Source: Haliotis rubra
Taxonomy: Eukaryota
Length of the DNA stretch: 64,000 bases
Assembly (NCBI RefSeq): GCF_003918875.1
Contig: NW_025765018.1
Span: 1 to 64,000 of the forward strand
Direction: 5' to 3'
The notes beneath the pieces were generated by a model, which ran no database searches, was not told where the DNA came from, and worked only from the letters and a program-made list of their open reading frames with translations. Every line of letters begins with the position of its first letter. Position 1 is the stretch's first letter. Both the position numbers and the translations under genes were made by a program. Positions 6,244 to 63,460 of the stretch are shown in pieces.

Positions 6244-9200
6244 TCACGGACTGATATCTGATAGTTCTGTAGCATACTGCTCAGCTGTTCTCCCCTGTAT
6301 GTCTCGAACAGTTTTGTCGACGCCTTGTCTGAGTAGCAGCTTCACTCGTTCACACCTGTTGTAGCTGCGGTCAGCAGCAGCCCGGAAAAAGGCCCTGTCC
6401 TGGTCATTTTGCTTATTTACAGTGACCCCAAGTTCTGAAAGAATCTCTAAAGTTTCATTTCGTGAAGCCTGTGCAGCGTAGTGTAAAGCTGTCCTTCCTT
6501 CGTGATCTTGTATTTTTGGGTTGACCTTCTTGAGAAGCATCTCCAGCATTTTCATCCTTCTATACTCACACAGTAGGATTCCATATTCTTGTTCGAATTC
6601 ACTTCGGTAAATAGTTGTCCTACGAGCACCTGTTTTAGTGAGAAGAGGTATAGTGTCACTAGGTCTGGGATGAAGAGGTTTTGGATGAAGAGGTATATTG
6701 GCAAACAAATTCTGTACTTCTGTGTAAGCACCGTGTTGAACCGGCTTTATGTTTTTGACTGGCGATTGTTCTAAAGCATAGTGAAGAGCTGTCCTTCCCT
6801 TCTTGTCAAGAACATTTGGGTCCACACTCTTCTCCAACAGCATCTCCAAAATATCACAGGTGTTGTCTCTGGCCTTTGCTGCACAGTGGAGAGGTGTCAT
6901 GCCCTGTAAGTCATGTACACCTGGATCAGCTTCGTGATCTAGAAGAAGCTTGACACTCTCTTTGTTCGAATGTTCTGACGCATAGTGAAGAGCTGTCCTT
7001 CCCTTCTTGTCAAGAACATTTGGGTCCACACTCTTCTCCAGCAGTATCTCCAAAATATGGTAACTGTAACGATTCTTAGCAGCACAGTGGAGACATGTCA
7101 TGCCCTGTAAGTCCTGTAAACATGGATCTGCTTCGTGATCTAGAAGAAGCATGACACTTTCTTTGTTCGAATGTTCTGACGCATAGTGAAGAGCTGTCCT
7201 TCCATGCTTGTCAAGAAGATTTGGGTATATGCCTCTCTCTAGCAGTATCGGCAAAATATCAGATCGGTAAGGACGCAAGTGTACAGCACAGTGAAGAGCT
7301 GACATGCCCTGCAGGTCCTGTACACCTGGATCAGCACAGCGATCAAGCAGAAACTTCACTGAGTCTTCAGAGTCACCTGAGACATAATGAAGTGCTGTCC
7401 TTCCTTTCTTGTCAAGAATATTTGGATCCACTCCTCTCTCGATCAGTGTCTGTAAGGCTCCATAACTATTCGCAGCAGCACAGTGGAGATATGTCATGCC
7501 TTGCAGATCCTGTACAGAAGGATCAGCACCACGATCTAGAAGAAGTTTGACGCTCTCTTTCTTTGGATATTCTGATGCATAGTGAAGTGCTGTCTTTCCA
7601 CGCCTATCTTGAACATTTAATTTTAACGATTTCTCAAGTAGCAGTGGAAGTGTATCCTTAAATACTGAGCCTTTTTTGGTAGAAGCACAATGGAGGGACG
7701 TCATGCCCCATAGATCTTGAACATCTGGATCAGCACCGTGATCAAGCAGAAGCATGACACTGGAGTTTTCCGAATGATCTGAAGCATAGTGAAGAGCTGT
7801 CCTACCTAGCTTATCCGGTATATTTGGGTCAACACCCTTCTCTAAAAATAACTTGAGGAATCCACAAGGACCCAGACAAGATAGCTCCGCATAATCATTG
7901 TTTGCTTCTAACATCTGTAAAGTGAAGCCTCTCTTCGTCACAACTAAATGAAGTGCTGTCATTCCCTGATTGTCTTGTATATTTGCATCAATTCCACTGT
8001 CTAGCAAGGCACTTACAGTCCTGTATCTTTCATGTACAGCAGCCATATGAAAGGGAGTCCATCCCATTCCATCCCTTACATTTGGGTCAACGCCTTTTTC
8101 CAGAAGAAGTTTCACAGTCTTAGGTTTACCACACCCTGCAGCATAGTGAAGAGGGTTTCTACCCATTATATCTTGAAGGTGTGGATTCACACCTTGCTCG
8201 AGAAGCATTTTGGTCAGCGTGTAGTTTGCTCTTGCACAATACAACATGCAAGGACTTTGAAGATACCAATACTGAGAAAATGAATATGAAAAAAGAGTTG
8301 GTGTATCAAGAAAACGTTCCCAAAGTTCAGATTTCCTCTGTTCAGTGGCATAGTGGAGATATGTTTTTCCGAAATCATCTCTTCTATTTGGATCGAATTC
8401 TCTGTCTGTATTTCCATGCTTGAGAATTAGCTCCGCTGCATCATAAATCATATCCTCAATGGCAAGACGAAGGGCTGTTGTACCACGGGAATCCATTGCA
8501 TTTAGATCAACACCCCTCTTTACCAATACATCAACCATTTTTATGATTTTGTTGTGTCTGAAAGGTGTTTTAAGTAAACACAGCAAAATGTTGCCTTTAC
8601 TGGCACCTTTGTGATTTACACTCAACCCTCTCTTCAGTAGGAATTCCAATATTTCAACTCCATAAGTATCGGCATGAGTGTCGATTGCTGAAAATATCGC
8701 TGTTCTGCCATCCTTGTCTTCTGCATCAGGAAGATGCTTTTGACATCAATGAGAAATGTGAGTTTCTCTAAAGCATCAACACGAGAGCATGCTGCCATGT
8801 GAACAATTGGTCTCTTGTCAGCGTCTACTGCTTCAATCTGTGCTCCTGAGTTGCACAAGAGCTCCAGTACTTCTATGTCAGCATACTCACAGGCTAGGTG
8901 AACAACACTTCTAGTTTGTGAACCGCATTGTGAAAGAATATTCACATCAGCTTCTTTGCTGCAAAGGAATTTTACGGTCTCCAAATCATTACATAGGACA
9001 GCCTTGTGAAGAATTGTTCTACCCTTTCCATCCATTTGATTTAAGATACTTTCTGCCACAACTAAAGCTTTCACTATTTCACGATTCACGTTTTCAATGA
9101 CTGACAAAGGTACGAGTCCTTCACGGTTTTCCAGGTTAACAGGTGCCTTATGCTGCAGAAGTATTTTCACACATTCAAGGTGACTGTTCTGAACAGCCAA

Positions 9201-11437
9201 ATGTAATGGGGTATTGCCATCATTGTCTTTCAAATCTACCTGAAAACCTTTCCCTAATAAGAAATCTGCACATTTATCGTTTCCATGTTGTGCTGCCCTG
9301 TGTAGCAAGAAGGTGTTTGCGGCAGCAACCCTAAAACGCTGGCTTATATCTTGGGAATATTTCATCAATATATCCAAGGACTCAGTGCTACCATAAGCTG
9401 CTGCCTGTTCTTGAGGTGTTGCGTATTTGGTGGAGTACTTGTTGGCATCGACGTAATTCCTCGTCTGCAAAATGTCTGTCTCAAGATTCAGTAAAAGATT
9501 CAGAACTGTGGCATCTGAGTGAGCTGAGGCTGACAAAAGGAGATGTTGACAATGAAGTTTACATCCAGTTGCAAGTAGTATTTGAATCATTTCTTTTAAA
9601 CATTCCCTGCTGCTAAACACAGTGAGTTTGGGATGATGTGTTTGCATCTTATCACAGAGCCATGATAATATCTCTGAGATTACATTGAGGTTGTCGTCCT
9701 TGTGTTTTAACATGTGCACTGTCAACTGGACTATGTGTGTGTTTCCCATGTGTACTGCATACAGTAAGATTTCTGCCATGTTTTGACCAATTGCACATCC
9801 TTTTCCTAATTCTGGACTGTAGCGTAGTCTTTTTTCCCTCACGTAAGCAGTAATAAAACCGTTAAAGATTCTATCAACGAGGTCGTTCTTAAGACTCTGG
9901 CTAGAATTCATGAATAGAGCTATAAAACAATTCTCGTTTGACTCAGCACCATGATCAAGAAGCCATTTGACAAAATTGTTACTTCCAACATAAATTGCAC
10001 AAGGCAAACATTCCTGTATTGTGTCTTTGAATTTTTCAGGCGATGGAATCGAATTTACAACAACTTGTACCAGATGATGATTACTTTCCATTACAAATTT
10101 ACTCAATAAATATTCATATTTGAAAAACCGAATCTTCTCATCTTCACGGATATATGAAGACAATTCATCAAAATATTTTCTCTGCATAATGCTTGTCAGT
10201 TTCCCCTTTTTCGCCCATCTTTGCACCAAGAATGATAGAAATTCCTTGTGCTTGAGTGAAGGATGTCCCACTATCATTCCACTGCTCTCAGGTTCAGCTG
10301 ACAAAAGCAACTCTGTGATGCGGTCAGCAAATACATCATAATTTTCCTCAGGTATCAAGACAATATTTATCTCTCCATCCAGTCTTTCGGTTCTTACCAC
10401 TTCTCCAAGGACATCAATTGGCAATGTTCTGATGCAAGAGCTGGGAAACTGCTCTGAGTAGCTGATCAAAACAGACTCATATATAGACTGATGCTGAAAA
10501 GCATATCCTTTCTGGCCTTGCTTTAAATAAACACCACAGAGTGAATCTGCTTTTGTTTTGATGTCAAATAAGCTTGGACGTGTTCGTAGATTTGAACAAT
10601 ATTCTGTCAACATCTCAACCATTTCTTTAAATTCAGATGTACATTTTCTTGGATCAAGAGGAGTTGCATTAAGATGCCCATCACTCATCAATACCAGCAA
10701 AAGAACCAGATAACTCAAACCATCACTTTCCTTGAGGGCATCAACTTCCTTTAGGACGCACTCATTGGGTTTCTTGAAAAAGCTTAACCCCTTCTTTTGC
10801 ACTTCCATGCTACTGGCAAAGAAAGTGCAAACCTGTGGGAACCCAAGGGCTGTTTTCATATTGACAATTTCTTCTACTTCTTTTTCAGAAAATTTGCCAT
10901 GACAAACAACTTTCAACATTTTTTCCTTTTCCTTATTCTGAAGAGTATACTCACCGTCATCAATGAGAAAATGACAGATCTTTGTCATGAGATTGTGTTT
11001 GTTTAGTCGGTACTGACACTGTGCGGTGATTTCAGATCTGGATGTTAAGATCAGAAAGATGTGGCCAGATTCAATAGATGGCCACATTATATCAAACTTC
11101 CTTGTCCAATCTGCAAAATGTGATTGTGAAAAGTTTGTCAGGCCAAAAATGTCATCAATCATCACAATGTAACGTTCACTTTTACTTCTGGACTTGTCAG
11201 TTTTGCCATTCTTCGGAATGAGTGACCATTCATCTGCTGAAGTCAACAGAAGAGGAGTCCTCCCTTCCATCTTAGACATCTTTTCTAGTAACCGCCGACC
11301 CAGCCGTGATTTCCCAGATCCTGACATCCCCTTTAGGAAGATACATCCACAATCTGTCAACAGTCTTAGGGCAGACCTCTCGGCATAGGTAGACACGTAT
11401 TCGGTTCTGTCATGCTTGAGTGAATGCTCCGTGGCAT
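6244..11437 (-). CDS. Giant terminal exon of NLR-like nSTAND3 NTPase + ankyrin-repeat protein, copy 1 (one apparent frameshift at ~8742)
   Basis: Acceptor ttatctttcAG at 11438-11440 is in frame with ORF 8634-11396. Walker A GMSGSGKS, Walker B IVMIDDIFG, sensor LILTSR, GxP (GFPQ) and winged-helix FQHQSIYE are typical of nSTAND3 STAND NTPases. More than 20 ankyrin repeats follow (TPLH/TALH). Copy 1 lacks one g at ~8742 relative to copy 2 (ttttgacatc vs ttttggacatc); restoring it joins ORFs 8634-11396 and 6244-8649 into ~1731 codons. Confidence 0.9.
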
Positions 11438-11619
11438 CTGAAAGATAATCATAATTGTAACATGCTTTAACATGTAGCTGAGAAAACTATTTCAGAAATT
11501 TGTTATCCAACATATATGTGAGATGAAATCATAGTTTTGTGATTTTGTTATGACCTGAGATCAAATTAGAACAGATTCGTGTCCTGATTGGGTCCCGTAA
11601 ACAGTCTCTAACTGCTGAC

Positions 11620-11938: not shown

Positions 11939-11962
11939 CGCGGATATTTTTAAAACGATCAT
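11939..11962 (-). CDS. 24-nt phase 1-1 micro-exon (DDRFKNIR) of STAND-ankyrin gene copy 1
   Basis: tttttattccAG|ATGATCGTTTTAAAAATATCCGCG|GTAAGTAT. Splices in frame to the giant exon (R-D-A-T-E-H). Conserved in copy 2 with one synonymous change. Confidence 0.8.
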
Positions 11963-13680: not shown

Positions 13681-13689
13681 AGTAGTTGT

Positions 13690-47700: not shown

Positions 47701-47825
47701 TGTACTGCAACGTGTTTCAGGGAAAGAGGATGGACTATTCAGCCTCAAACAACAAATCAGAGGTGGCATCGTCAACTTCAACCGTCTACATTACAGGCAA
47801 ACTCACTGACGCTAGCTTTAAAACT

Positions 47826-49497
47826 CAGGTCACAGTTCCAAATTGGCACAGAAGTGAACACACGTCACAGTTCCGCACACGGACACAGATGTCAACACAC
47901 ATGTCATAGGTCCACACGGACACAGATGTCAACACGCACGTAACAGCTCCATTCCGACACAGACGGCAACACACGCGTCAATGTTGCACACTGACACAGG
48001 CGGCAAAACACGTCACAGTTCCACACTGACACAGGTGTCAACACACACGTCACAGAACAACACTGACACAGACGTCAACACACAAGCCACGGTTCCACAC
48101 CGACACAGACGTCAAGACACAAGTCACGGTTCCACACCGACACATATGTCAGCACACACGTCACAGGTCAACGCTGACACTGATGTCAACACACATATAA
48201 CAGCTCCACACACTCACACATACGTCAACACAGACGTCACACTTCCACACAGCGTCACAGACGTCAACACACACGTCACAGTTCCACACCCGTCACACTT
48301 TCACACCGACACAGACGTCAACACACACGTCACAGTTCAACACACCGACACAGACGTCAACACACACGTCACAGTTCCACACACCGAAACAGACGTCAAC
48401 ACACACGTCACAGTTCCACACACCGCAACAGACGTCAACACACACGTCACAGTTCCACACACCGACACAGACGTCAACACACACGCCACAGTTCCCCACA
48501 CCAACACAGACGTCAACACACACGTCACAGTTCCACACACCGAAACAGACGTCAACACACACGTCACAGTTCCACACACTGACACAGACGTTAATACACG
48601 CCACAGCTACACACTGACACAGACGTCAACACACATGTCACAGCTCTACACACTCATACAGGCGTCAACACACACGTCACAGCTCCACACTGACACAGAC
48701 GTCAACACACACGTCACAGCTCCACACAGACGGCAACTCACACGTCACTGTTGCACACTGACACAGGTGTCACCGTTCTACACTGACACAGACGGCAACA
48801 CACGTCACAGTGTCACACTTACACAGATGTCAACACACACGTCAGTGTTCCACACCGACACAGCCTTCAACACACACGTCAGTGTTCAACACCCGAGACA
48901 GACGGCAACACATACGTGACACTTCCACACTGACACAGACGTCAGCAGACACGCCACAGTTCCAAGCTGACACAGACGTCACAGTTCCACACTGACATCG
49001 ACATCAACACATTCGTCACAGCTCCACACCGACACAGACGGCAACGTCACAGTTCCACACTGACACAAACGTCAACACACACGTCACAGCTCCATAATGA
49101 CACAGACGTCAAAACAAACGTCACAGCTCAACACTGACAAGGACGTCAACACACACGTCACAGTTCTTCACCGACACAGACATGAACACACGTCACTGTT
49201 CCACACCAACACAGATGTCAGCACACACGTAACAGCTCCACACTGACACAGACGTCAACACACACGTCACTGTTTGACACACCGACACAGACGTCACAGT
49301 TTTACACTTACACAGATGTCAACACACACGTCAGTGTTTTACACCGACACAGCCGTCAACACACACGTCACACTTCCACACTGACACAGACGTCAGCACA
49401 CACGCCACAGTTCCAAACTGACACAGACGTCACAGTTCCACACTTACATCGACGTCAACACACACGTCACAGTTCAACACACCAACACAGACGTCAA
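47826..49497. repeat. Same CA-rich minisatellite, copy 2 (~1.7 kb)
   Basis: Same unit. The distal part (48730-48990) is nearly identical to 3700-3990; the array is shorter. Confidence 0.97.
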
Positions 49498-51844
49498 TAT
49501 AGTAGTAGCCATGGGCTGAATGTTGGTGGGTGGGTGTAGAACACACAACATAACGCTACTTGTGGTCACAGATGGCAGCCATTTTATTCATCCAATAAAA
49601 AGGAATGTTTGATAATTCTGAAAATATACATAAATATAATTAACTATTTGAGCATAAAGGCATAACATGCCTTACATATACACGTATTACACGTTCTACA
49701 TATTCTTAGAATACAGCTAGCCCTAACAATGCATTAGCATAAATAAATCTTTAAATATAAATAATAAGATGAAAACTATTCGTTCATATCTATGTATATC
49801 ATTTATGATATACATGAAGAATATATAGAGAGTTCATTACATACAAGATCATATGTAGTACACTAACCACAGAGTGTAAACAAGGTCTCATAGCAGTCAC
49901 GGATCATCAATCATCACGGGTCATTCTAAGAAAAGTTAATATACAAAATTGATAATACTAACAATGGTATATAAAACAAGTTATGATAAAAACAATAACT
50001 ATCACATCCACCCTCACTATTTCTTACTATATTCACACATCACGGTTTTTCACAGAAATTGATACTTCACAACCGTACACGGACACTGGCTGTTACACAT
50101 ACAAAAATATATATATGTATAAAATATCAAACAAAACAAGAACGAATAATAGCATCAAAGAACTGAAGCCATCATAACTGCAATAAACATCTAGTGATAC
50201 AGTCGAAGTTGTTATTGAAACGCTAACCAAGAATTGGTGATAATGTCCTGCTTGTACATTGTCAGATCCAAAGGAATACACATAAGCATCTCATATTACA
50301 GCATATCACATCATTCATGAGATCACTTGCTGAAAACCAAAACCAATTGCATGTGACAGTGGTCTTCACTGTGAATCAGTGTTTAAAGTGTGTAATTAAG
50401 CTCCTGCTCACATTCAATAAAGGGCAATGGAATGCATTTTTAGACTTGTTCTGTTTTTAGACAGGGTTCTGATAGGTACAACAATCGCATGGGCCTTTCC
50501 AGTGTAATCTGACCCAGAGGGTTCGAGAAAGGTTTGGGAGCCTAAGGGGAGCTAACCTTTGTCACAAGCAGGTTACATTATAATTGCAAAATTTAACGTT
50601 AGCACCGTTTAAAACACAGACAAAGACTTGGGTCATTTTCGATGTGCCTATGTAACTATTACAGTGCATATATTTCTTCATACATTTTTATATTTTTCAC
50701 AAATTATTCATAACAAAGAAAATCCGTATACGTACAAGTCGCAGTGCATAATGTGTCTTGTTTATAGCCCGCATGTCAAGCGCAGTAGTGGGCAATTAGC
50801 AAACGCATCCACGCCAACCTTAAACTAATTAATCAAAGATGAAGCTAGCGAGCTATGTCGGCTCTGGCCTTTCTTCTCGGGTACATCGCTTGGTCAAGCA
50901 CAGATAAATAGTCCCATCCCAGCAGGAGCATATCTACCACCAACTAAGTCGTAATCGAAAATCAACTTTTGTTGAACAAGATTGAGATTACCATCATGCC
51001 ATCCTCCTTGTCCTGTCGTAAATGCCATGGTCAGATATTTTGTTAAGCAGCTGGCGCAAGCTGACCGTGGCTACACCATTAAATGACATTTACTGATGGC
51101 ATTGAAGATTAAGGGTCCTGCCCTGAGGGGGGTCTATGATAAAAGGGCCACACCGAATGATTGCTGAATACATTAGACAGACAAAGTGGATAGAATTTCG
51201 GTGCACTTTGGATATATATGGAAACAATTATGTTGTTTGAATATATGAAGTTTTACAGAAACTCATTGAAATGGTTTACTCTATGACAACACTATGACAT
51301 AACAATGCAATTTTAACCAGCTACCTCCCATAGAAAAGACATTTTGATGGCCGTATCATACTGAAGCACAATATCTACAACTGCAGGCTGTCTGTTTCGT
51401 TCCCTGTATGATCTACATATAACCAGCTTTCACATTGTAAAGAGAATATATATCGCAGAACTAAAAGGAATGTACACAGGTTTGTATGGGCTCCATTTGT
51501 TTGGCCATACTGCGCATGCCTATATCTATTTGTCTCTAAAAACCCTTTACATGTAATAACTCTAGAGGACCAAGGAACTTAATTTATTCATGAGCGTTCC
51601 GAAAAACCCATGCAGACGCTGAAAGAAAGCTTTAGTTAGATCTACAAGCTTAATTTGAAACAGTTCAAGATTAGTGAACAGCACACTGATAGACTGTCTC
51701 ACTGTCCCTTGACCAAGTTATTCTGTCTTCCGTCCTGACCTTTCTCCAATGCCAAAGCCGTATATGAAGCAAAGGTAACATTTCCACACGGTCACGGTAC
51801 TGCCGGCTCACTGGGGCTTGTTTTCAATATGGAGTTATTTGGTT

Positions 51845-51962
51845 CACACTAGAAATGAACTTCACACATTGTACCCATGTTGATAATCTAACCTGGTCTT
51901 CTGGGTGATGACCTAACGCTTTAACGCGTTACCGCTTTAACCACAAGGATACCCCACCGCCA
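51845..51962 (-). mobile_element. Old family-A SINE remnant downstream of the gene (shorter at ~6010-6080 in copy 1); others at 20540-20655, 37630-37790 and 43785-43935
   Basis: Reverse-complement similarity to the tRNA-SINE head and body. Confidence 0.6.
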
Positions 51963-52127
51963 AGTGCTACTATATAAATACCGCCGAAACCCTCCCGTTC
52001 CTTCTTTCCCCTTCACGTCTGGGTTGCATTGTCTACTTTACAATAATCCAGAATGGCCACAATTGTTCTCGACATTCCCGTGCTTTTCTCTAATTCTGTG
52101 CCGAATGGTGTACCATCTCCAGAGAAG

Positions 52128-55100
52128 TCACGGATTGATATCTGATAGTTCTGTAGCATACTGCTCAGCTGTTCTCCCCTGTCTGTCTCGAACAGTTTTG
52201 TCGACGCCCCGTCTGAGTAGCAGCTTCACTCGTTCACACCTGTTGTAGCTGCGGTCAGCAGCAGACCGGAAAAAGGCCCTGTCCTGGTCATTTTGCTTAT
52301 GTACAGTGACCCCAAGTTCTGAAAGAATCTCTAAAGTTTCATTTCGTGAAGCCTGTGCAGCGTAGTGTAAAGCTGTCCTTCCTTCGTGATCATGTATTTT
52401 TGGGTTGACCTTCTTGAGAAGCATCTCCAGCATTTTCATCCTTCTATACTCACACAGTAGTGTTCCATATTCTTGTTCGAATTCACTTCGGTAAATAGTT
52501 GTCCTACGAGCACCTGTTTTAGTGAGAAGAGGTATAATGTCACTAGGTCTGGGATGAAGAGGTTTTGGATGAAGAGGTATATTGGCAAACAAATTCTGTA
52601 CATCTGTGTAAGCACCGTGTTGAACCGGCTTTATGTTTTTGACTGGTGATTGTTCTAAAGCATAGTGAAGAGCTGTCCTTCCTTTCTTGTCAAGAACATT
52701 TGGGTCCACACTCTTCTCCAACAGCATCTCCAAAATATCACAGGTGTTGTCTCTGGCCTTTGCTGCACAGTGGAGAGGTGTCATGCCCTGTAAGTCCTGT
52801 ACACCTGGATCTGCTTCGTGATCTAGAAGAAGCTTGACACTCTCTTTGTTCGAATGTTCTGACACATAGTGAAGAGCTGTCCTTCCTTGCTTGTCAAGAA
52901 CATTTGGGTCCACACTCTTCTCCAGCAGTATCTCCAAAATATGGTAACTGTAACGATTCTTAGCAGCACAATGGAGACATGTCATGCCCTGTAAGTCCTG
53001 TACACCTGGATCTGCTTCGTGATCTAGAAGAAGCTTGACTCTCTCTTTGTCCGAATGTTCTGACGCATAGTGAAGAGCTGTCCTTCCTTGCTTGTCAAGC
53101 AGATTTGGGCATATGCCTTTCTCCAGCAGTATCGGCAAAACATCACATCGGTAATGATGCAAGTGTACAGCACAGTGGAGAGCTGACATGCCATGTAAGT
53201 CCTTCACACCTGGATCAGCACAGCGATTAAGCAGAAACTTCACTGAGTCTTCAGAGTCACATTCTGACACATAGTGGAGAGCTGTCCTTCCCGTCTTGTC
53301 AAGAACATTTGGGTCCACACTCTTCTCCAGCAGAATCTCCAAAATATCACAGGTGTTGTCTCTGGCCTTTGCTGCACAGTGGAGAGATGTCATGCCATGT
53401 ATGTCCTTCACACCTGGATCAGCTTCGTGATCTAGAAGAAGCTTGACACTGTCTTTGTCCAAATGTTCTGACACATAGTGGAGAGCTGTCCTTCCCGTCT
53501 TGTCAAGAACATTTGGGTCCACACTCTTCTCCAGCAGAATCTCCAAAATATCACAGGTGTTGTCTCTGGCCTTTGCTGCACAGTGGAGAGATGTCATGCC
53601 ATGTATGTCCTTCACACCTGGATCAGCTTCGTGATCTAGAAGAAGCTTGACACTGTCTTTGTCCAAATGTTCTGACACATAGTGGAGAGCTGTCCTTCCC
53701 GTCTTGTCAAGATCATTTGGGTCCACGCTCTTCTCTAGCAGTATCTCCAAAATATCACAGCTGTTGTCTTTGGCCTTTGCTGCACAGTGGAGAGATGTCA
53801 TGCCCTGTAAGTCCTGTAAACTTGGATCAGCTTCGTGATCTAGAAAAAGCTTGACACTCTTTTTGTCCGAATGTTCTGACACATAGTGAAGAGCTGTCCT
53901 TCCTTTCTTGTCAAGAACATTTGGGTCCACACTCTTCTCTAGCAGTATCTCCAAAATATCACAGCTGTTGTCTTTGGCCTTTGCTGCACAGTGGAGAGAT
54001 GTCATGCCTTGTAGGTCCTGTAAACATGGATCAGCATTGTATTCTAGAAGAAACTTGACACACTCTTTCATCGAATTTTCTGAAGCATAGTGAAGAGCTG
54101 TCCTTCCATGCTTGTCAAGAAGATTTGGGTATATGCCTTTCTCTAGCAGTATCCGCAAAACAGCAGACCGGTAACGACGCCAGTGTACAGCACAGTGCAG
54201 AGCTGACATGCCCTGCAGGTCCTGTACACCTGGATCAGCACAGCGATCAAGCAGAAGCTTCACTGAATCTTCAGAGTCACCTTCTGAGACATAATGAAGT
54301 GCTGTCCTTCCTTTCTTGTCAAGAATATTTGGATCCACTCCTCTCTCGATCAGTGTCTGTAAGGCCCCGTACCTATTCGCAGCAGCACAGTGGAGAGATG
54401 TCTTGCCTTGCAGATCCTGTACAGAAGGATCAGCACCACGATCTAGAAGAAGCTTGACGATCTCTTTGTCTGAATTTTCTGATGCATAGTGAAGTGCTGT
54501 CCTCCTTTGCTCATCAATGACATTTGGGTTAACGACTGATTTTAACAGTAGTTGAAAAGCTTCTATATTACATCTCCATTTTATAGAAGCACAGTGGAGG
54601 GCTGTCATGCCCTGTTGATCCCGTAAACATGGATCTGCACCATGGTCCAGTAGAAGCTTCAAACCACTACTCCTGTTTTCAGAAGCATAGTGAAGTGCTG
54701 TCTTTCCACGCCTATCTTGAACATTTAATTTTAACGATTTCTCAAGTAGCAGTGGAAGTGTATCCTTAAATACTGAGCCTTTTTTGGTAGAAGCACAATG
54801 GAGGGACGTCATGCCCCATAGATCTTGAACATCTGGATCAGCACCGTGATCAAGCAGAAGCTTGACACTGGAGTTTTCCGAATGATCTGAAGCATAGTGA
54901 AGAGCTGTCCTACCTAGCTTATCCGGTATATTTGGGTCAACACCCTTCTCTAAAAATAACCTGAGGAATCCACAAGGACCAAGACAAGATAGCTCTGTAT
55001 AATCATTGTTTGCTTCTAAGCTCTGTAAAGTGAGGCCTCTCTCCGTCACAACTAAATGAAGTGCTGTCATTCCCTGATTGTCTTGTATATTTGAATCAAT

Positions 55101-58100
55101 TCCACTGTCTAGCAAGGCACTTACAGTCCTGTATCTTTCGTGTATAGCAGCCATATAAAAGGGCGTCCATCCCATTCCATCCCTTACATTTGGGTCAACG
55201 CCTTTTTCCAGAAGAAGTTTCACAGTCTTAGGTTTACCACACCCTGCAGCATAGTGAAGAGGGTTTCTACCCATTATATCTTGAAGGTGTGGATTCACAC
55301 CTTGCTCAAGAAGCTTTTCGGTCAGCGTGTAGTTTGCTCTTGCACAATACAACATGCAAGGTCTTTGAAGATAGCAATACTGAGAAAATGAATATGAAAA
55401 AAGATCTGGTGTATCATGAAAACGTTCCCAAAGTTCAGATTTCCTCTGTTCGGTGGCATAGTGGAGACATGTTTTTCCGAAACCATCTCTTCTATTTGGA
55501 TCGAATTCTCTGTCTGTATTTCCATGAGCTTGAGAATTAGCTCCGCTGCATCATAATTCATATCCTCAATGGCAAGACAAAGGGCTGTTGTACCACGAGA
55601 ATCCATTGCATTTAGATCAACGCCCCTCTTTACCAATAAATCAACCATTTTTATGATGTTGTCGTGTCTGAAAGGTGTTTTAAGTAAACACAGCAAAATG
55701 TTGTCTTTACTGGCACCTTTGTGATTCACACTCAACCCTCTGTTCAGTAGGAATTCCAATATTTCAACTCCATTAGTATCGACATGAGTGTCGATTGCTG
55801 AAAATATCGCTGTTCTGCCATCCTTGTCTTCTGCATCAGGAAGATGCTTTTGGACATCAATGAGAAATGTGAGTTTCTCTAAAGCATCAACGCGAGAGCA
55901 TGCTGCCATGTGAACAACTGGTCTCTTGTCAGCATCTACTGCTTCAATCCGTGCTCCTGAGGTGCACAAGTGCTTTAGTATTTCTATGTCAGCATACTCA
56001 CAGGCTAGGTGAACAACACTTCTAGTTTGTGAACCGCATTGTGAAAGAATATTCACATCAGCTACTTTGCTGCAAAGGAATTTTACAGTCTCCAAATCAT
56101 TACATAGAACAGCCTTGTGAAGAATTGTTCTACCCTTTCCATCCATTTGATTTAAGATACTTTCTGCCACAACTAGAGCTGTCACTATTTCACGATTCAC
56201 GATTTCAATGACTGACAAAGGTACGAGTCCTTCACGATTTTCCAGGTTGACAGGTGCCTTATGCTGGAGAAGCATTTTCACACATTCAAGGTGACTGTTC
56301 TCAACAGCCAAATGTAATGGGGTATTGCCATCATTGTCTTTCAAATCTACCTGAAAACCTTTCCCTAATAAGAAATCTGCACATTTATCGTTTCCATGTT
56401 GTGCTGCCCTGTGTAGCAAGAAGGTGTTCGCGGCGGCAACCCTAAAACGCTGGCTTATACCTTGGGAATATTTCAGCAATATATCCAAGGACTCAGTGCT
56501 ACCATAAGCTGCTGCCTGTTCTTGAGGTGTTGCGTATTTGGTGGAGTACTTGTTGGCATCGACGTAATTCCTCGTCTGCAAAATGTCTGTCTCAAGATTC
56601 AGTAAAAGATTCAGAACTGTGGCATCTGAGTGAGCTGAGGCTGACAAAAGGAGATGTTGACAATGAAGTTTACATCCAGTTGCAAGTAGTATTTGAATCA
56701 TTTCTTTTAAACATTCCGTGCTGCTAAACACAGTGAGTTTGGGATGATGTGTTTGCATCTTATCTGAGAGCCATGATAATATCTCTGAGATTACATTGAG
56801 GTTAATCGTCCTTGTGTTTTAACATGTGCACTGTCAACTGGACTATGTGTGTGTTTCCCATGTGTACTGCATACAGTAAGATTTCTGCCATGTTTTGACC
56901 AATTGCACATCCTTTTCCTAATTCTGGACTGTAGCGTAGTCTTTTTTCCCTCACGTAAGCAGTAATAAAACCGTTAAAGATTCTATCAACGAGGTCGTTC
57001 TTAAGACTCTGGCTAGAATTCATGAATAGAGCTATAAAACAATTCTCGTTTGACTCAGCACCATGATCAAGAAGCCATTTGACAAAATTGTTACTTCCAA
57101 CATAAATTGCACAAGGCAAACATTCCTGTATTGTGTCTTTGAATTTTTCAGGCGATGGAATCGAATTTACAACAACTTGTACCAGATGATGATTACTTTC
57201 CATTACAAATTTACTCAATAAATATTCATATTTGAAAAACCTAATCTTCTCATCTTCACGGATATATGAAGACAATTCATCAAAATATTTTCTCTGCATA
57301 ATGCTTGTCAGTTTCCCCTTTTTCGCCCATCTTTGCACCAAGAATGATAGAAATTCCTTGTGCTTGAGTGAAGGATGTCCCACTATCATTCCACTGCTCT
57401 CAGGTTCAGCTGACAAAAGCAACTCTGTGATGCGGTCAGCAAATACATCATAATTTTCCTCAGGTATCAAGACAATATTTATCTCTCCATCCAGTCTTTC
57501 GGTTCTTACCACTTCTCCAAGGACATCACTTGGCAATGTTCTGATGCAAGAGCTGGGACACTGCTCTGAGAAGCTGATCAAAACAGACTCATATATAGAC
57601 TGATGCTGAAAAGCATATCCTTTCTGGCCTTGCTTTAAATAAACACCACAGAGTGAATCTGCTTTTGTTTTGATGTCAAATAATCTTGGACGTGTGGGTA
57701 GATTTGGGCAATATTCTTTCAACATCTCAACCATTTCTTTAAATTCAGATGTACATTTTCTTTGATCAAGAGAGGTTGCATTAAGATGCCCATCACTCAT
57801 CAATACCAGCAAAAGAACCAGGTAACTCAAACCATCACTTTCCTTGAGGGCATCAACTTCCTCTAGGACGCACTCATTGGGTTTCTTGAAAAAGCTTAAC
57901 CCCTTCTTTTGCACTTCCCTGCTTCTGGCAAAGAAAGTGCAAACCTGTGGGAACCCAAGGGCTGTTTTCATTTTGACAATTTCTTCTACTTCTTTTTCAG
58001 AAAATTTGCCATGACAAATAACTTTCAACATTTTTTCTTTTTCCTTATTCTGAAGAGTATACTCACCGTCATCAATGAGAAAATGACAGATCTTTGTCAT

Positions 58101-58548
58101 GAGATTGTGTTTGTTTAGTCGGTACTGACACTGTGCGGTGATTTCAGATCTGGATGTTAAGATCAGAAAGATGTGGCCAGATTCAATAGATGGCCACATT
58201 ATATCAAACTTCCTTGTCCAATCGGCAAAATGTGATTGTGAAAAGTTTGTCAGGCCAAAAATGTCATCAATCATCACAATGTAACGTTCACTTTTACTTC
58301 TGGACTTGTCAGTTTTGCCATTCTTCGGAATGAGTGACCATTCATCTGCTGAAGTCAACAGAGAGGAGTCCTCCCTTCCATCTTAGACATCTTTTCTAGT
58401 AACCGCCGACCCAGCCGTGATTTCCCAGATCCTGACATCCCCTTTAGGAAGATACATCCACAATCTGTCAACAGTCTCAGGGCAGACCTCTCAGCATAGG
58501 TAGACACGTATTCTGTTCCGTCATGCTTGAGTGAATCCTCCGTGGCAT
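52128..58548 (-). CDS. Giant terminal exon of nSTAND3-ankyrin gene copy 2 (apparent frameshifts at ~58362, ~56803, ~55527)
   Basis: Acceptor at 58549-58551 and the same STAND motifs. Relative to copy 1: -1 nt at ~58362, +1 nt at ~56803, +2 nt at ~55527. Corrected exon is ~2139 codons, with an ankyrin array 408 aa longer than copy 1. Confidence 0.88.
53262..53710 (-). repeat. Near-perfect 204-bp (68-aa, two-ankyrin) tandem duplication inside copy 2
   Basis: ttctgacacatagtggagagctg recurs at 53262, 53466 and 53670 (period 204). Confidence 0.95.
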
Positions 58549-58765
58549 CTGAAAGATAATCATAATTGTAACATGCTATAACATGGGTATCTGAGAAAAC
58601 TATTTCAGAAATTTGTTATCCAACATATATGTGAGATGGAATCATAGTTTTGTGATTTTGTTATGACTTGAGATCAGATTAGATTAGAACAGATTCGTGT
58701 CCTGATTGGGTCCCGTAAACAGTCACTAACTGCTGACAGAATTTACAGGTATGAGTTATACTTAC

Positions 58766-58789
58766 CGCGGATATTTTTAAAGCGATCAT
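58766..58789 (-). CDS. 24-nt micro-exon, copy 2
   Basis: AG|ATGATCGCTTTAAAAATATCCGCG|GTAAGTAT. CGT to CGC is a synonymous change versus copy 1. Confidence 0.8.
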
Positions 58790-58922
58790 CTGGAATAAAA
58801 AATATAATTTAGAATATGGGTGTCATGTAAATACTTGGACTCACTTCTTACAGTTAATGTATTTCTAAATATAAAAGGAATGAACATTTATATAGTACAT
58901 TCTTCCAAAAGAAGAAACGCAC

Positions 58923-59352
58923 TAGGGCTGGGACGGGTAGGAAAAAATGGAATCGAGTACCCGCATGTACTTATCCGAATCGGAATCGAGTACCCGGAAA
59001 TGTAAGGAATAACGCGCATCTGTCAACTTTCTGAATATCCAATCACTAGTTGACAGAAATGTTTATAGAAAAACTTGAAATGATGTCAATAAGACACTGA
59101 AACTGAACATAGGCAGATATATTACAGTCGTTAATAATAATCTGCATTAATCGGCAATGCCAATGATGCAAATGTGTGTTACGTCAATATTGAAAAAGAC
59201 AAGTTATTGTCTGCCCTTGTCATTACAGAGTTCTCTCCTTGTCATTACAGAGTTCTCTCCTCCTTTTCCGGGTACACGATTCCTAGCAACAGGACTCGAT
59301 TCCAGCTGTACCCGATCCGGATTCGAGTACCCGAGTACCCGTCCCAGCACTA
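58923..59352. mobile_element. hAT-type MITE (430 bp), copy-2-specific intronic insertion
   Basis: TIR tag(g/t)gctgggacgggta, 8-bp TSD aaacgcac (58915-58922, 59353-59360). Empty site at ~12089 in copy 1. Confidence 0.92.
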
Positions 59353-60019
59353 AAACGCACAGGCGTTTTCAGCAGTTAATTTCAATATACTTTGACAGCA
59401 ATCGTCATGAAGACAATTCCTATGTTTGAATCCCGTTAAACATGTCGTGGTTGTTGTGTATTGTGGGAAAACGCACCCCAAAATGATACATGAAAAGTGT
59501 AAGCAGGAAAAGGTTTCCAAGTTATAGACGTGCCAAACCATCAGGAAATGCTTTCCGTCCGTAAACCCCATTTTTTTCTTATTTTATGCGTTTCCTCCTT
59601 CAACAACAGGATGGGAGACAACGTGTCTATCGACGTCGACACGAACGTTTTGCGCCGAGCTGCGTGGATAGATTTGATAGAGAAAGCGTCACATGTGCAT
59701 TGAGTAAACTGAATTAATGCTGACAATGACAACAATACATGTGTTCATTCGTGTGTCGAATGTCCTTCATCTATGTTCAAGCCTAACTGACTCATGTACA
59801 CTTAAAACGTTAAATATACTGCTTTATTTTGGGCCTATGTGTTTGTTTTTTAAGAGTTTCTTTTTCCTGTTAGAAGTTGGGTTTTGGGGTTTTTTAATAT
59901 GTCATTTCACCCTGCCGTTTCTAGAAAAGTATGCAAAATATTCAGAATATTACACCATAATCGAGCTGTTTACCAACAAAATTAATGGTGTGTATGTCAA
60001 GAAAAGGTGTATACATCAC

Positions 60020-60911
60020 CAATGTGTTGTGGCGTCACTCCTGATGATCTGGGTTGCTGTAGCATAACTCTTTTCTTTTTTTTTGATGATGCGGGCTGCT
60101 GATGCGTCACTCCTGATGATGCGAGCTGCTGATGCATCACTCCTGATGATGCGAGCTGCTGATGCGTCACTCCTGATGATGCAGGCTGCTGATGCATCAC
60201 TCTTGATGATGCGGGCTGCTGATGCATCACTCTTGATGATGCGAGCTGCTGATGCATCACTCCTGATGATGCGGGCTGCTGATGCGTCACTCTTGATGAT
60301 GCGGGCTGCTGATGCATCACTCTTGATGATGCGGGCTGCTGATGCATCACTCTTGATGATGCGGGCTGCTGATGCATCACTCTTGATGATGCGGGCTGCT
60401 GATGCGTCACTCCTGATGATGCAGGCTGCTGATGCATCACTCTTGATGATGCGGGCTGCTGATGCATCACTCTTGATGATGCGGGCTGCTGATGCATCAC
60501 TCTTGATGATGCGGGCTGCTGATGCGTCACTCCTGATGATGTGGGCTGCTGATGCGTCACTCCTGGTGACTCGGGCTGCTGATGCATCACTTCATTTGGT
60601 CCAAGCTGTTCCCCCATCATTTCAGATGGTACACTTTGATGTATCACTCCTGATGGCTGGACACGCCCATCTCTATGAATGACTGTGACGCCTAATGCAC
60701 TAGAATCTATGACATTCAAACTATATTCTCCTATTTCAATAACTGGTGCGCCAGGTAGTGACAACAGTGAAGACACATTTGTATCGGTTGTGTCCAGTGC
60801 TCTTCCATCTCGAGTCGATGTACACGGCTTCTTCACATCCACATTCTCATCCTCATCATCTGGGTCTTCGGTTGAGCCCACGCGGAATTTTCTTTTTTGT
60901 GCTTGAGACAT
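60020..60911 (-). CDS. First coding exon of copy 2, with 17 tandem 10-aa repeats
   Basis: ORF 59997-60911; acceptor 60921-60923; candidate donor at 60020/60019. 892+24+6419 (corrected) nt = 2445 codons, so the three-exon model keeps frame. Confidence 0.68.
60085..60592 (-). repeat. 30-bp coding minisatellite (V[MT]HQQ[PL]ASS[RG]) x17
   Basis: gatgatgcgggctgctgatgcatcactctt tandem units; only ~4-5 units at 12660-12825 in copy 1. Confidence 0.95.
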
Positions 60912-62108
60912 TTTCAGTACCTGAAAAAAAGCATCACATGCGATGACAATAGCTCAACACTAGTCTACTTCATATTTACTCCACGATATGATCTTGGTGT
61001 GTATGATCTTATGCTGGAATACATTAACTTGCTTCTGTGTCATCTGATGACCTGAGCGAACATCGTTTGTGGCTGAAACCTGTTTCCACGAAACGTATTT
61101 CACATGTGGTTTATTTTGTGTTTAGCAAGGTTTGTCTTCCGTTAGTCAGTCAGTTCGTTGACTGTGAGGTATTCGATGCATTAAGACCCACAGTTGGTGG
61201 GCGTGGTGGGCGAGCTGGCTTAGGCTGTGTAAGGCGCCAGGCTAGTGATCCAGCGGGCATGAGGTGTCGGGATCGAGCCCACCTGTGACTGGTTGTAAAA
61301 ACCTTGAAGTCAGCCTTGTGTGCAGACTCTTTCAGTGTTGTCACAACCCTTAGTGTACAGTACACAACCCATTTAAAAGAACCCACGAATCCGTTGGTAT
61401 ATGACCAGATGGTGGCCACATGAATACGTGCACACACCTACAGTAGTTGTTTTTGAGAGCCCGGGCCAAGCCGGACCGAATGCTTGTGATACTCTGTCTT
61501 TGTTGAGAATATGTAGAAAAGAGAGGTTCACCTTCAGCAAGGTGTTTGCTTCAAATACTACGTTTTGAGCCTCTGTGAAGTGATATTTAGGTAGATATAA
61601 TACTAATCTATGTGTTAAAACACAAATCAGAATATATGTGTGAGGTTTAAGTTTGTTTGGAGAGCCCGGGCCAAGTCGGGCCGAACAGCGACTAAACACT
61701 TTTGATTGAGGCTATGTTGTGAATGGAGAGAGAAATGGCTTCACTTTAACGAACCAGTTATCTTTACATGTGACATTTTGTAACATCACACGGTGATATT
61801 TAGGTAGATATAATACTAATCTATAGAATTAAACACAAATCAGGACATATGTGTGGGGTTTAAGTTGTTTTCGAGGGCCCGGGCCAAGCCGGACCGAAAG
61901 CATGACTGTGATTCTGTGTGGTTGTTGAGAATGTATAGAAAATAGGGCTTCACTTTCAGCAACGTGTTTGCTTCAAATACAACGCTTTGAGACTCTATGA
62001 AGACGTACTTTGTTAGATATAACTCTATTCTAGAGATATAGACAGAAATCAGGATTCATGTGTGATGTTTAGGGTGTTTTTGACAGCACGGGCCATGTCT
62101 GGCTGAAC

Positions 62109-63460
62109 GGTGGGTAGACAATAAGCTCACTGGGATAAAAAACCCTCGGACAAAAACCCCCTAGGCTTAATGTCCCCAGGACAAAAAGCCCTTGCAAATT
62201 TCAACCCATAGGATAAAACACCCTCGGTGCATATTTTGAGTTGACAGGTGATAACATGATGTTTTCTAAGCAATTCCTCCCACTGCTGATAGTTGTTACA
62301 GGCTCCTTAGTGATGACGTTGTTATTTTAACAATGGAATGAAGTCTGCTAAATGTTGTTTCAGAGAACTGGCTCAAATTGGTCACTTCCTCTTATGTTTG
62401 ATTTTGTTGGGCAGGTACTCATTGTGGTATGTCAATGAACATGGTGTTTATTAAGATGGTCTATTAAGATGGTCAGCGCTATTATTATTTAAATAAATTG
62501 CTGATTTCCTGCTACCTTCTTTAAAGTTTGGAATCCAGCGGCCGGCTATTGGTGACGGTGTTCCCAGCATTCGCTTTTGACTGGTATAGGACACAATATT
62601 AGACTGGTATGAACTGTAGCACAAGTATCAACTGCACAACTGCATTATGTGCTTGGTGATTTACATTTGTGAAGTATGTGCTAGAAATTTACGACTATGA
62701 ATATGATCGCTCATATTGCCAAGTCATATAAACATAATATAGTGTTAGACGACATACCTTTGTATCATTTAATGTCAATAATACACTTTTGTCATTCTGA
62801 AGTTCATTGTTGTCCATATCAGACGACAGGCAGCCATTGTGCACAACTTGGTGACGTCATATGTTTACGTGGTATTTCCTTCAGATCAAATTACGGGCGC
62901 ACAGCACATGTCACAATCTTACACATTGTCAACAGCCGAGCCGGGAGTGTCAATGTAGGTTTACAGTAATATCGAAGTTGTTAAATTGTATTACAGTAAT
63001 CGATTTTGTAGAATTAGCACAATAGTCACATTTCTTCAGCATTAATAGACTCAAAGTTGCATTAGTTTTTAATAGTAGATGACTGTATGTACGCAAATTG
63101 ATGAAAGTCTGAACATATTTTGCTCACAGCTGTGCCGATCAACTGATGAACGTAAACAATCGATAGGTGGCGCGATTTGGCGTGTGGCTCGTGAGAAATT
63201 ATGTCATTAGAAAATACCACGGAAACGTAGGTACCACGGAATCATATGATTACATGGTTACATATGCTATTTAATGTTGAATGTTATATTATATTGTATT
63301 CATGTGGGAATGAAAAAAAAGATTTGTTGGTATTCTATTACATCTCTTCATTGAGGACCTTTTGTCCTACCCATTGAGGGCTTTTTGTCATGGGGGCATT
63401 TAGCCCAGGGGTGTTTTGTCTGAGGGTGTTATGTCATTGTGGGCCTATTGTCCTACCACC
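62109..63460. mobile_element. Same MULE-like element in duplicate copy 2
   Basis: Same insertion site and near-identical sequence, so it inserted before the duplication. Confidence 0.8.

What the first reader, a model, noticed from the sequence alone, without database searches (positions are those of the whole stretch)
52640..54930. Modular, combinatorially reshuffled ankyrin sensor array in an invertebrate NLR-like STAND receptor
Seen: the C-terminal array alternates A-type (GRTALHY..) and B-type (GMTxLHC..) repeats that form ~68-aa/204-bp modules. Copy 1 has 5 A+B pairs and copy 2 has 11, a net difference of 1224 nt = 6x204, all in frame. The framework is nearly invariant, while residues after helix 1 vary strongly (A: SDHSENSS, SEYPKKES, SENRSSG, SEGDSEDS, SENSMKEC, SEHLDKDS; B: TKKGSVFKD, IKWRCNIE, ANRYGA, HWRRYRSA / HLRPYRSD / HLHHYRCD, KAKDNSCD, KNRYSYH). 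Module types recur in new A/B combinations, and one 204-bp unit is a fresh near-perfect duplication. Established: ankyrin binding surfaces are formed by variable positions on a fixed scaffold, and fungal NLRs diversify highly conserved WD40/ANK/TPR repeats by unequal exchange. Inference: a germline (possibly also somatic) repeat-shuffling receptor-diversification system within a single exon of a molluscan nSTAND3 immune or allorecognition receptor.
Basis: partly seen in the sequence, partly recalled or inferred. Interest (0 to 1): 0.85.

Follow-up and report, generated by a model that had tools for sequence, protein, structure and literature searches.

The report
Unstable ankyrin array, abalone STAND gene
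Two neighbouring copies of an abalone NLR-like switch gene carry a run of paired ankyrin repeats that has gained and lost whole 204-bp units by ordinary unequal recombination, much as in fungal immune receptors, but nothing here shows a special or somatic diversification system.

Summary
The window is the first 64 kb of Haliotis rubra contig QXJH01001112.1. It carries two minus-strand paralogs of an nSTAND3 NTPase-ankyrin gene. Their arrays of 2-ankyrin (A+B, about 204 bp) modules have 5 units (6799-7806) and 11 units (52683-54914). The difference is 1224 nt, in frame, and one 204-bp unit is perfectly duplicated.

- Three more arrays were compared: a third paralog on the same contig, a fourth on another contig, and the H. 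asinina ortholog. All show real module turnover: hybrid junction units, unit and block duplications, and lineage-specific amplification.
- In copies 1-3, modules cluster by position rather than by gene, and A/B pairings are inherited together.
- The variable loop evolves near neutrality (omega 0.5-1.9, pooled 0.89, never significantly above 1). The scaffold is under purifying selection (omega about 0.46).
- Nothing bears on somatic change.
- The four frameshifts that break both window copies are absent from short-read contigs of two other studies. They are probably errors of the 30x Nanopore assembly.

This is an animal example of the high-internal-conservation repeat arrays known from fungal NLRs, which a 2026 survey already reported in animals. 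The scan had already noted this abalone nSTAND3-ankyrin family on other DNA (s1-329440).

The parts
52683..54914 (-). Copy 2 array: 11 A+B two-ankyrin modules (2232 nt)
6799..7806 (-). Copy 1 array: 5 A+B modules (1008 nt)
53262..53712 (-). Perfect 204-bp tandem duplication (modules 7 and 8 of copy 2; 247 nt identical at offset 204)
7501..7599 (-). Chimeric A unit of copy 1. Its first ~23 nt match copy 2 unit A2 and the rest matches A3. This is the junction of a one-module (201-nt) unequal-exchange deletion.
52131..58615 (-). Copy 2 large exon (nSTAND3 NTPase, helical region, about 30 ankyrin repeats). It is broken in this assembly by indels at ~58363 (-1), ~56806 (+1) and ~55529 (+2).
6247..11486 (-). 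Copy 1 large exon, broken in this assembly by a 1-nt deletion at ~8743
10911..11390 (-). nSTAND3 NTPase domain of copy 1 (Walker A motif G-x-S-G-S-G-K-S and Walker B motif I-V-M-I-D-D present)
   Evidence: sequence
11939..11962 (-). 24-nt mini-exon (DDRFKNIR) of copy 1 with AG/GT splice sites. The copy 2 equivalent lies at ~58766-58789.
60000..60911 (-). Exon 1 of copy 2 (starts MSQAQKRK...) with a 30-bp/10-aa coding repeat array (17 copies at 60083-60591). Copy 1 exon 1 lies at ~12581-13146 with about 4 copies.

Best explanation
The locus is part of a tandem cluster of at least three paralogs, 38-46 kb apart on one Haliotis rubra contig, with a fourth on another contig. They belong to a lineage-specific STAND NTPase gene with three parts: an N-terminal low-complexity exon, an nSTAND3 P-loop switch with a helical arm, and a long C-terminal ankyrin solenoid. 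Part of the solenoid is a tandem array of a two-ankyrin module (A+B, 67-69 aa, about 204 bp).

Shown: because neighbouring modules are 65-100% identical in DNA and the period is a multiple of three, ordinary unequal homologous recombination, or replication slippage, adds, removes and fuses whole modules in frame. The scaffold residues of each repeat are held by purifying selection. The segment at the end of helix 1, the inter-helix turn and the start of helix 2 drifts at about the neutral rate. The result is paralogs and orthologs with different module numbers and, over longer times, different module complements.

Inferred from architecture only: the protein acts as an NLR-like cytoplasmic sensor in which the ankyrin solenoid binds a ligand and releases the NTPase for oligomerisation. 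Module turnover would then change its binding surface.

No dedicated diversification machinery is needed or seen.
For: - Architecture: nSTAND3 plus ankyrin by Pfam. AlphaFold2 predicts a regular helix-turn-helix solenoid for the array (pLDDT 83). The array aligns to ankyrin-1/2 repeats, with the variable segment opposite the canonical x-x-G-H-x-x-x stretch.
- Cluster: the window is contig positions 1-64000. Copy 3 lies at about 90.0-96.4 kb on the same strand and copy 4 on QXJH01001143.1.
- Unequal exchange: the chimeric A2/A3 unit in copy 1, the perfect 204-bp duplication, the duplicated KNRYSY-type module in copy 3, a 12-unit block repeated at 94-99% identity plus a B1/A2 hybrid in copy 4, and an A2/B2 hybrid plus seven modules 91-99% alike in H. 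asinina.
- Positional orthology: in a maximum-likelihood tree of 27 modules, modules group by position across copies 1-3, with 6 starred forks.
- Selection: scaffold omega is 0.41-0.54 (p 1e-8 to 5e-12 against neutrality). Variable-segment omega is 0.76, 0.52-1.94 and 0.89, all non-significant against 1.
- Gene under constraint: outside the array, copy 1 versus copy 2 has dS 0.040, dN 0.022, omega 0.55. Copies 3, 4 and the H. asinina gene have intact ORFs of more than 2000 aa.
- Frameshifts: all four in the window are absent from contigs of runs X1 and X2 that otherwise match the same copy. The assembly is 30x Nanopore with Racon x2 and Pilon x1 polishing (PMC6774278).
Against: - No long read spans any array, so the module counts rest on one 30x Nanopore assembly. 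This applies most to the perfect duplicate and to the 99%-identical block in copy 4.
- In the largest orthologous contrast (copy 2 versus copy 3), the variable segment has 37 replacement and 4 silent changes (omega 1.9, p 0.22). My parsimony and Nei-Gojobori counts cannot exclude some positive selection.
- Copy 4's module order is not collinear with copies 2 and 3. Module 5 has discordant A and B halves (15/78 versus 2/78 differences). Some re-assortment therefore does occur.
- No ligand, expression or phenotype data exist. The putative RNA runs hold only low-depth contigs that are 95-96% identical to the window.
Confidence: 0.7

Rival explanations
1. One reading: the array is an adaptive receptor-diversification device in which A and B cassettes are combinatorially re-assorted in the germline, and perhaps somatically, to create new binding specificities under diversifying selection.
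For: - Real module turnover among five arrays.
- Copy 4 has a rearranged module order.
- The variable segment includes the last two helix-1 positions, which face the ankyrin groove.
- Omega is 1.5-1.9 in two orthologous contrasts.
- Single codons have lopsided counts (A13: 0 silent/14 replacement; A28: 0/10; A24: 1/11).
- Module 5 shows discordance between its A and B halves.
- Fungal HIC NLRs work this way (PMC4986451, PMC13449251).
Against: - A/B partners are inherited together, and modules of copies 1-3 cluster by position.
- Pooled omega of the variable segment is 0.89 and never significantly above 1.
- Mean silent divergence between units is about 0.5, so most units are old and not being homogenised.
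- No single codon survives correction for 69 codons.
- No data of any kind bear on somatic change.
Confidence: 0.12
2. Assembly artefact: the 5-versus-11 difference, the perfect duplicate, or the two 'copies' themselves (two haplotypes placed in tandem) are products of a noisy 30x Nanopore hybrid assembly.
For: - The same stretch carries four indel errors or private variants that short-read contigs do not show.
- The assembly needed haplotig purging, and heterozygosity is 1.3-1.4% (PMC6774278).
- Exact repeats such as 53262-53712 cannot be checked with short contigs.
- Run X1 shows a single mosaic version where the window has two.
Against: - The two deletion junctions in copy 1 join units that are only 65-88% identical. 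One has a clean breakpoint inside a 23-nt identical stretch, which looks like recombination rather than collapse.
- A contig of X2 matches copy 2 exactly across its copy-specific B1-A2 junction (record 18, 376 nt, 0 differences). X2 also holds both copy-1-like and copy-2-like variants.
- The copies differ by 3.2% in coding DNA, about twice the heterozygosity, and 31 kb of unrelated DNA lies between them.
- Copy 3 independently shares the same 10-module backbone as copy 2.
Confidence: 0.1
3. Decaying pseudogenes: both window copies are dead (one and three frameshifts), and the array differences are neutral decay of redundant duplicates.
For: - The frameshifts lie at ~8743, ~55529, ~56806 and ~58363, outside long homopolymers.
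- NCBI splits copy 2 into models of 272, 490 and 1075 aa.
- Omega in the ankyrin parts outside the array is 0.8-0.9.
Against: - Contigs from two other studies that match copy 2 (X2 records 20 and 24) or copy 1 (X2 record 21) lack every one of the four indels.
- There are no in-frame stop codons.
- All array changes are in frame.
- Omega over the whole non-array coding region is 0.55, with silent changes in excess (34.5 observed against about 22 expected).
- The Walker motifs and the splice sites of the mini-exon are intact.
Confidence: 0.08

Closest known systems
Fungal NLRs with high-internal-conservation (HIC) ANK/TPR/WD40 repeats (Podospora het-e/het-d/HNWD family; ANK locus Pa_3_8560) - PMC4986451, PMC2873952, PMC13449251
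   Same: A STAND NTPase followed by a C-terminal array of very similar superstructure-forming repeats. Repeat number and order change by unequal exchange. Variability is concentrated at a few positions on a conserved scaffold. The genes are clustered and lineage-specific.
   Different: - The ATPase is nSTAND3, not NACHT or NB-ARC.
- The repeating unit is a pair of ankyrin repeats (about 68 aa), not a single repeat.
- Most units are old (65-85% nt identity, silent divergence about 0.5), and only sub-families reach 90-100%.
- Positive selection was not detected.
- Exchange between genes was not seen among copies 1-3.
- Allelic length polymorphism is untested.
- There is no recognisable cell-death effector domain.
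[quoted passage not shown]
   Same: That survey lists nSTAND1-3 among the ATPases found with HIC ANK/TPR/WD40/LRR repeats. It concludes that such NLR-like proteins occur in animals, plants and bacteria.
   Different: That work is a database count. It gives no locus-level reconstruction of module gain and loss, and none for abalone. This locus supplies one worked animal example.
Abalone EGF-TM-nSTAND3-ankyrin family noted earlier in this scan (s1-329440), and Haliotis proteins annotated as 'serine/threonine-protein phosphatase 6 regulatory ankyrin repeat subunit-like'
   Same: The same nSTAND3-ankyrin core and the same genus-wide expansion. Best hits of the NTPase part are Haliotis proteins at 28-40% identity. 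One of them (P0016) also has seven near-identical 68-aa double-ankyrin modules.
   Different: This sub-family has no EGF or transmembrane part. Its N-terminus is an acidic, Q/H/S-rich repeat exon.
Lamprey/hagfish variable lymphocyte receptors (somatic assembly of LRR cassettes)
   Same: Modular repeat cassettes on a solenoid scaffold determine the binding surface.
   Different: VLR genes are assembled somatically from flanking donor cassettes with a cytidine deaminase. Here the arrays are complete germline exons, no donor cassettes were seen in the window, and no somatic data exist.
Canonical ankyrins and designed ankyrin repeat proteins (PDB 4rlv, 5y4d, 6mol and others)
   Same: Best sequence matches to solved structures (E 1e-97 to 1e-56), with the same helix-turn-helix-hairpin repeat.
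   Different: B units carry a turn 2-3 residues longer. The most variable stretch covers the turn and the start of helix 2, not mainly the hairpin tips used by many natural ligands.

Membership tests
nSTAND3 STAND NTPase (Pfam PF20720) | Profile match above the curated cut-off | tested here: met
   Copy 1: 68.2 bits, E 8.7e-19. Copy 3: 75.1 bits, E 6.6e-21. Cut-off is 27.2 bits.
nSTAND3 STAND NTPase (Pfam PF20720) | Intact P-loop (Walker A) and Walker B acidic residues | tested here: met
   G-M/I-S-G-S-G-K-S and I-V-M-I-D-D read directly in the translations. Catalysis was not assayed.
Ankyrin-repeat solenoid | Repeated 33-aa helix-turn-helix-hairpin units recognised by profile and by fold | tested here: met
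   Ank_2 E 2.8e-158. The AlphaFold2 model has pLDDT 83 with paired helices in every unit. Ankyrin-1/2 chain 4rlv_A matches at E 1.3e-97.
NLR-like tripartite receptor (effector - NOD - repeats) | N-terminal signalling or cell-death effector domain | tested here: not met
   Exon 1 has no Pfam domain in copies 1 and 2. Copy 4 gives only a 30-bit match to nlz1, and none of its matched stretches passes the E-value limit on its own, in a low-complexity stretch. Homologs P0001 and P0002 start directly at the NTPase.
HIC (high internal conservation) repeat array, sensu Dyrka 2014 | At least 85% identity between repeats over at least 100 aa in total | tested here: met
   Met in copy 2 (3 modules, 204 aa), copy 3, copy 4 (9 modules) and H. 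asinina (6 modules). Not met in copy 1.
HIC repeat array, sensu PMC13449251 | T-REKS similarity coefficient Psim of 0.7 or more | tested here: inconclusive
   T-REKS was not available. My stand-in, the fraction of residues matching the column consensus of 68-aa modules, gives 0.75-0.84.
HIC NLR dynamics | Repeat-number differences produced by unequal exchange | tested here: met
   Shown between paralogs and between species: a chimeric unit, unit and block duplications, and hybrid units. Allelic polymorphism was not tested.
HIC NLR dynamics | Concerted evolution or repeat exchange within and between genes | tested here: inconclusive
   Modules of copies 1-3 group by position, not by gene. H. 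asinina modules are 91-99% alike to each other and 85-92% to H. rubra modules.
HIC NLR dynamics | Positive diversifying selection at positions of the binding surface | tested here: not met
   Variable-segment omega is 0.76, 0.52-1.94 and 0.89, all non-significant against 1. The method is crude (parsimony and Nei-Gojobori counts), so power is low.
Somatic receptor diversification (VLR-like) | Somatic sequence change of the array; donor cassettes | not testable with these tools
   Only assembled contigs of public runs were available. No tissue-resolved long reads exist here.

The most novel reading that the evidence does not exclude
The abalone nSTAND3-ankyrin cluster would be an animal counterpart of the fungal het/HNWD genes. 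Array length and module content would be highly polymorphic between individuals and kept by balancing or diversifying selection. The modules would set the specificity of a cytoplasmic non-self sensor (pathogen effector, virus, or transmissible or allogeneic cells). Unequal exchange in a double-ankyrin array would then serve as a germline specificity generator in a metazoan.
Probability: 0.15. Interest if true: 0.7.

Novelty: new member of a known kind. Interest (0 to 1): 0.4.

Why it matters
Repeat arrays that reshuffle by unequal exchange are the best-understood way in which fungal NLRs create new recognition specificities. For animals, the papers found here offer only database counts. This locus gives a concrete, reconstructable animal case:
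- Four paralogs and one ortholog share a double-ankyrin module.
- The junctions and duplications can be read base by base.
- The genes sit in a lineage-specific tandem cluster of a commercially important, disease-prone mollusc.

If population data showed allelic hypervariability, the locus would become a candidate recognition locus for abalone immunity. As it stands it is a well-documented example of ordinary tandem-repeat dynamics in an uncharacterised STAND receptor family.

It also carries a practical warning. The reference assembly and its annotation break two of the genes through probable indel errors.

Tried and rejected
- I first suspected that both window copies were pseudogenes because of one and three frameshifts. 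I rejected this as the main reading after laying public contigs on the stretch: contigs that match each copy lack all four indels.
- After the three-array module tree I concluded there was no shuffling at all. I softened this after finding copy 4 and the H. asinina ortholog, whose arrays are rearranged or re-amplified.
- Pairwise dN/dS over all unit pairs is saturated (pS 0.4-0.7), so it serves only as background. I replaced it with tree-based counts and orthologous contrasts.
- The first protein search missed the close paralogs because of its length window. The exhaustive search and a region search with the 2140-aa ORF found them.
- The putative RNA runs (X7-X10) gave only low-depth contigs 95-96% identical to the window. 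I could not assign them to a copy, so I make no claim about expression.
- The test for discordance between A and B halves is suggestive only.
- Literature searches for abalone or mollusc STAND-ankyrin repeat instability found no specific report.
- I did not use the bacterial, viral and metagenome locus scans, because the gene is eukaryotic.
- HyPhy, PAML and T-REKS are not installed, so I could not run site models or the exact Psim.
Full report
WHAT IS THERE. The window has no N runs. It holds a segmental duplication: about 22-16241 matches about 47356-64000 at 91-98% identity. Each copy carries a minus-strand gene whose long open frames hit Pfam nSTAND3 (PF20720) followed by many ankyrin repeats. 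An exact match of a database protein (P0040, 490 aa, identical to window 58274..56805) and two contig look-ups identify the window. It is positions 1-64000 of Haliotis rubra contig QXJH01001112.1 (GCA_003918875.1). The 'molluscan nSTAND3' part of the finding is therefore correct.

THE OBSERVATION.
- Tandem Repeats Finder sees a 204-bp period at 52661-54338 and a 201-bp period at 6763-7599.
- Splitting the translations at the G-x-T-x-L-H motif gives strictly alternating A units (32-33 aa) and B units (32-36 aa). There are five pairs in copy 1 (7806..6799) and eleven in copy 2 (54914..52683).
- The length difference is 1224 nt and in frame. In detail it is 201 + 1020 + 3 nt.
- Modules 7 and 8 of copy 2 are identical: 53262-53508 equals 53466-53712.
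- Amino-acid entropy peaks in A columns 10-16 and B columns 9-18.
- An AlphaFold2 model of the copy 1 array (pLDDT 83) places these columns at the last residues of helix 1, the inter-helix turn and the first turn of helix 2.
- In alignments to ankyrin-1/2 structures, these columns face the canonical x-x-G-H-x-x-x stretch.
All the descriptive claims are thus confirmed.

ARE THE GENES ALIVE? Aligning the two copies outside the array (96.8% identity) shows one frame-breaking indel in copy 1 (~8743) and three in copy 2 (~58363, ~56806, ~55529). NCBI accordingly splits copy 2 into three gene models. I laid contigs of four public runs on 52600-58500.
- At all three copy 2 sites, every contig of X1 and X2 has the in-frame state.
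- X2 records 20 and 24 are otherwise copy-2-like, with 1 and 0 differences where copy 1 differs at 12 and 2 positions.
- X2 record 21 is copy-1-like at five diagnostic positions but lacks the copy 1 deletion.
The assembly was built from about 30x Nanopore reads with two Racon rounds and one Pilon round (PMC6774278). The indels are therefore most likely consensus errors, or at most private alleles.

Several further points support working genes.
- Outside the array, the copies differ with dS 0.040, dN 0.022 and omega 0.55, an excess of silent changes.
- The Walker A and B motifs are present.
- A 24-nt mini-exon with AG/GT splice sites, used in the NCBI model of a paralog, is conserved in both copies.
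- The gene has three exons: an N-terminal exon with a 10-aa coding repeat, the mini-exon, and one exon of 5-6.5 kb holding the NTPase and all ankyrin repeats.

MORE ARRAYS. An exhaustive protein search and a region search found three more genes.
- A third paralog on the same contig at about 90.0-96.4 kb (L001, intact 2140-aa ORF, 11 modules).
- A fourth on contig QXJH01001143.1 (P0185/L003, 2185-aa exon ORF).
- An H. asinina ortholog at 67% identity (P0186/L004, 2071-aa ORF).
No closer relative appeared in H. rufescens or H. cracherodii (31-32% identity), so the sub-family is young and lineage-specific.

HOW THE ARRAY CHANGES. Nucleotide identity between units ranges from 51 to 100%. A maximum-likelihood tree of the 27 modules of copies 1-3 groups them by position in the array, not by gene. 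The three arrays are collinear versions of a roughly 10-module ancestor.
- Copy 1 lost module 2 through an exchange that left a chimeric A unit. Its first 23 nt match A2 and the rest matches A3.
- Copy 1 also lost five modules between module 4 and module 10.
- Copy 2 duplicated module 7.
- Copy 3 duplicated the KNRYSY-type module.
- Copy 4 differs more. It has a B1/A2 hybrid unit, three near-identical module-5-type units, and a 12-unit block (about 1.2 kb) repeated at 94-99% identity.
- In H. asinina, seven modules are 91-99% identical to each other but only 85-92% to any H. rubra module, and one A2/B2 hybrid is present. This is lineage-specific amplification, the signature of concerted evolution on a longer time scale.
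All of these are the expected products of unequal homologous exchange or slippage in a tandem array whose period is a multiple of three. A and B partners stay together. Only the EHS-type A unit has two B partners, and these are sister types. Discordant divergence of A and B halves is suggestive for module 5 only (p 0.0013 before correcting for 84 tests). 'Modular turnover' is therefore shown; 'combinatorial A/B reshuffling' is not.

SELECTION.
- All-pairs estimates are saturated (pS 0.4-0.7) and give omega 0.73/0.42 for the variable segments and 0.25/0.37 for the scaffold.
- Parsimony counts on unit trees give variable-segment omega 0.76 (p 0.25 against 1) and scaffold omega 0.41 (p 1e-8).
- With all 94 units, the values are 0.89 (p 0.63) and 0.46 (p 5e-12).
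- Orthologous modules give variable-segment omega 1.94 (copy 2 versus 3; 37 replacement and 4 silent changes; p 0.22), 1.55 (copy 1 versus 3) and 0.52 (copy 1 versus 2). The scaffold gives 0.51-0.67.
- Single codons with lopsided counts (A13 0/14, A28 0/10) do not survive multiple testing.
The safe statement is a constrained scaffold and a loop that evolves at about the neutral rate. Diversifying selection is neither shown nor excluded.

COMPARISON WITH WHAT IS KNOWN. The closest system is the high-internal-conservation repeat arrays of fungal NLRs. These are defined by at least 85% identity over at least 100 aa. They show repeat-number polymorphism, concerted evolution and positive selection on the binding face (PMC4986451).
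- The 85%/100-aa criterion is met by copies 2, 3, 4 and the H. asinina gene, but not by copy 1.
- A consensus-match stand-in for Psim gives 0.75-0.84.
- A 2026 survey already states that HIC repeats joined to ATPases, nSTAND3 included, occur in animals (PMC13449251, section 12).
- A more distant H. rubra paralog (P0016) also has seven near-identical 68-aa double-ankyrin modules.
The locus is thus a new, well-resolved member of a known kind, not a new kind of system.
- It lacks a recognisable effector domain, so full NLR membership is not met.
- It differs from VLR-type systems in being a complete germline exon.

VERDICT. There is no support for combinatorial A/B re-assortment, for an excess of replacements, or for somatic change, and the immune function is inferred only. 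The main uncertainty is the assembly. Module counts need long accurate reads.

Noticed in passing
window 8743; 55529; 56806; 58363: Four frame-breaking indels in the two gene copies are absent from short-read contigs of two other studies. They are probably consensus errors of the Nanopore-based reference. They make NCBI split copy 2 into models of 272, 490 and 1075 aa.
   Followed up: yes
window 12700-12826 and 60083-60591: A coding 30-bp (10-aa, G-V-T-H-Q-x-P-x-S-S type) repeat array in exon 1. It has about 4 copies in copy 1 and 17 in copy 2, with long versions in copy 4 and H. asinina. In copy 1 the exon 1 reading frame is also split within this array.
   Followed up: partly
window 557-4295 and 47822-49497: A degenerate 37-bp (74/111-bp higher-order) C/A-rich satellite lies 2-3 kb downstream of each gene copy and is part of the duplicated segment.
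   Followed up: no
window 18798-19450: A composite tandem repeat that alternates TTAGGG telomere-type hexamers with a 20-nt spacer (26/39/65-bp periods, 93-100% matches). This is an interstitial telomere-like array between the two gene copies.
   Followed up: no
window 13684-14334, 15701-16367, 61445-62095, 63461-63893: About 214-bp tandem repeats (2-3 copies each) upstream of exon 1 in both copies.
   Followed up: no
window 37799-38686 and 42977-43768: 110-118-bp satellites in opposite orientation, rich in CGCGAGA motifs. They lie in the arms of the foldback element noted by another finding (s1-349519).
   Followed up: no
P0016 (H. rubra, 1635 aa), residues ~920-1400: A distant nSTAND3-ankyrin paralog (28% identity) carries seven almost identical 68-aa double-ankyrin modules. 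Highly conserved double-repeat arrays therefore recur in this abalone gene family.
   Followed up: partly
L003:10019-12340 (H. rubra contig QXJH01001143.1): The copy 4 array contains a 12-unit (about 1.2 kb) block repeated at 94-99% identity and a B1/A2 out-of-register hybrid ankyrin unit. This is either a very recent block duplication or an assembly artefact.
   Followed up: partly
run X1 contigs on window 55977-56839: One 862-nt contig of a differently labelled organism is a mosaic. It is copy-2-like at eight diagnostic sites and copy-1-like at eleven (a twelfth difference lies at the copy 2 indel site). This hints at gene conversion between the paralogs or a different copy structure in that sample.
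   Followed up: partly
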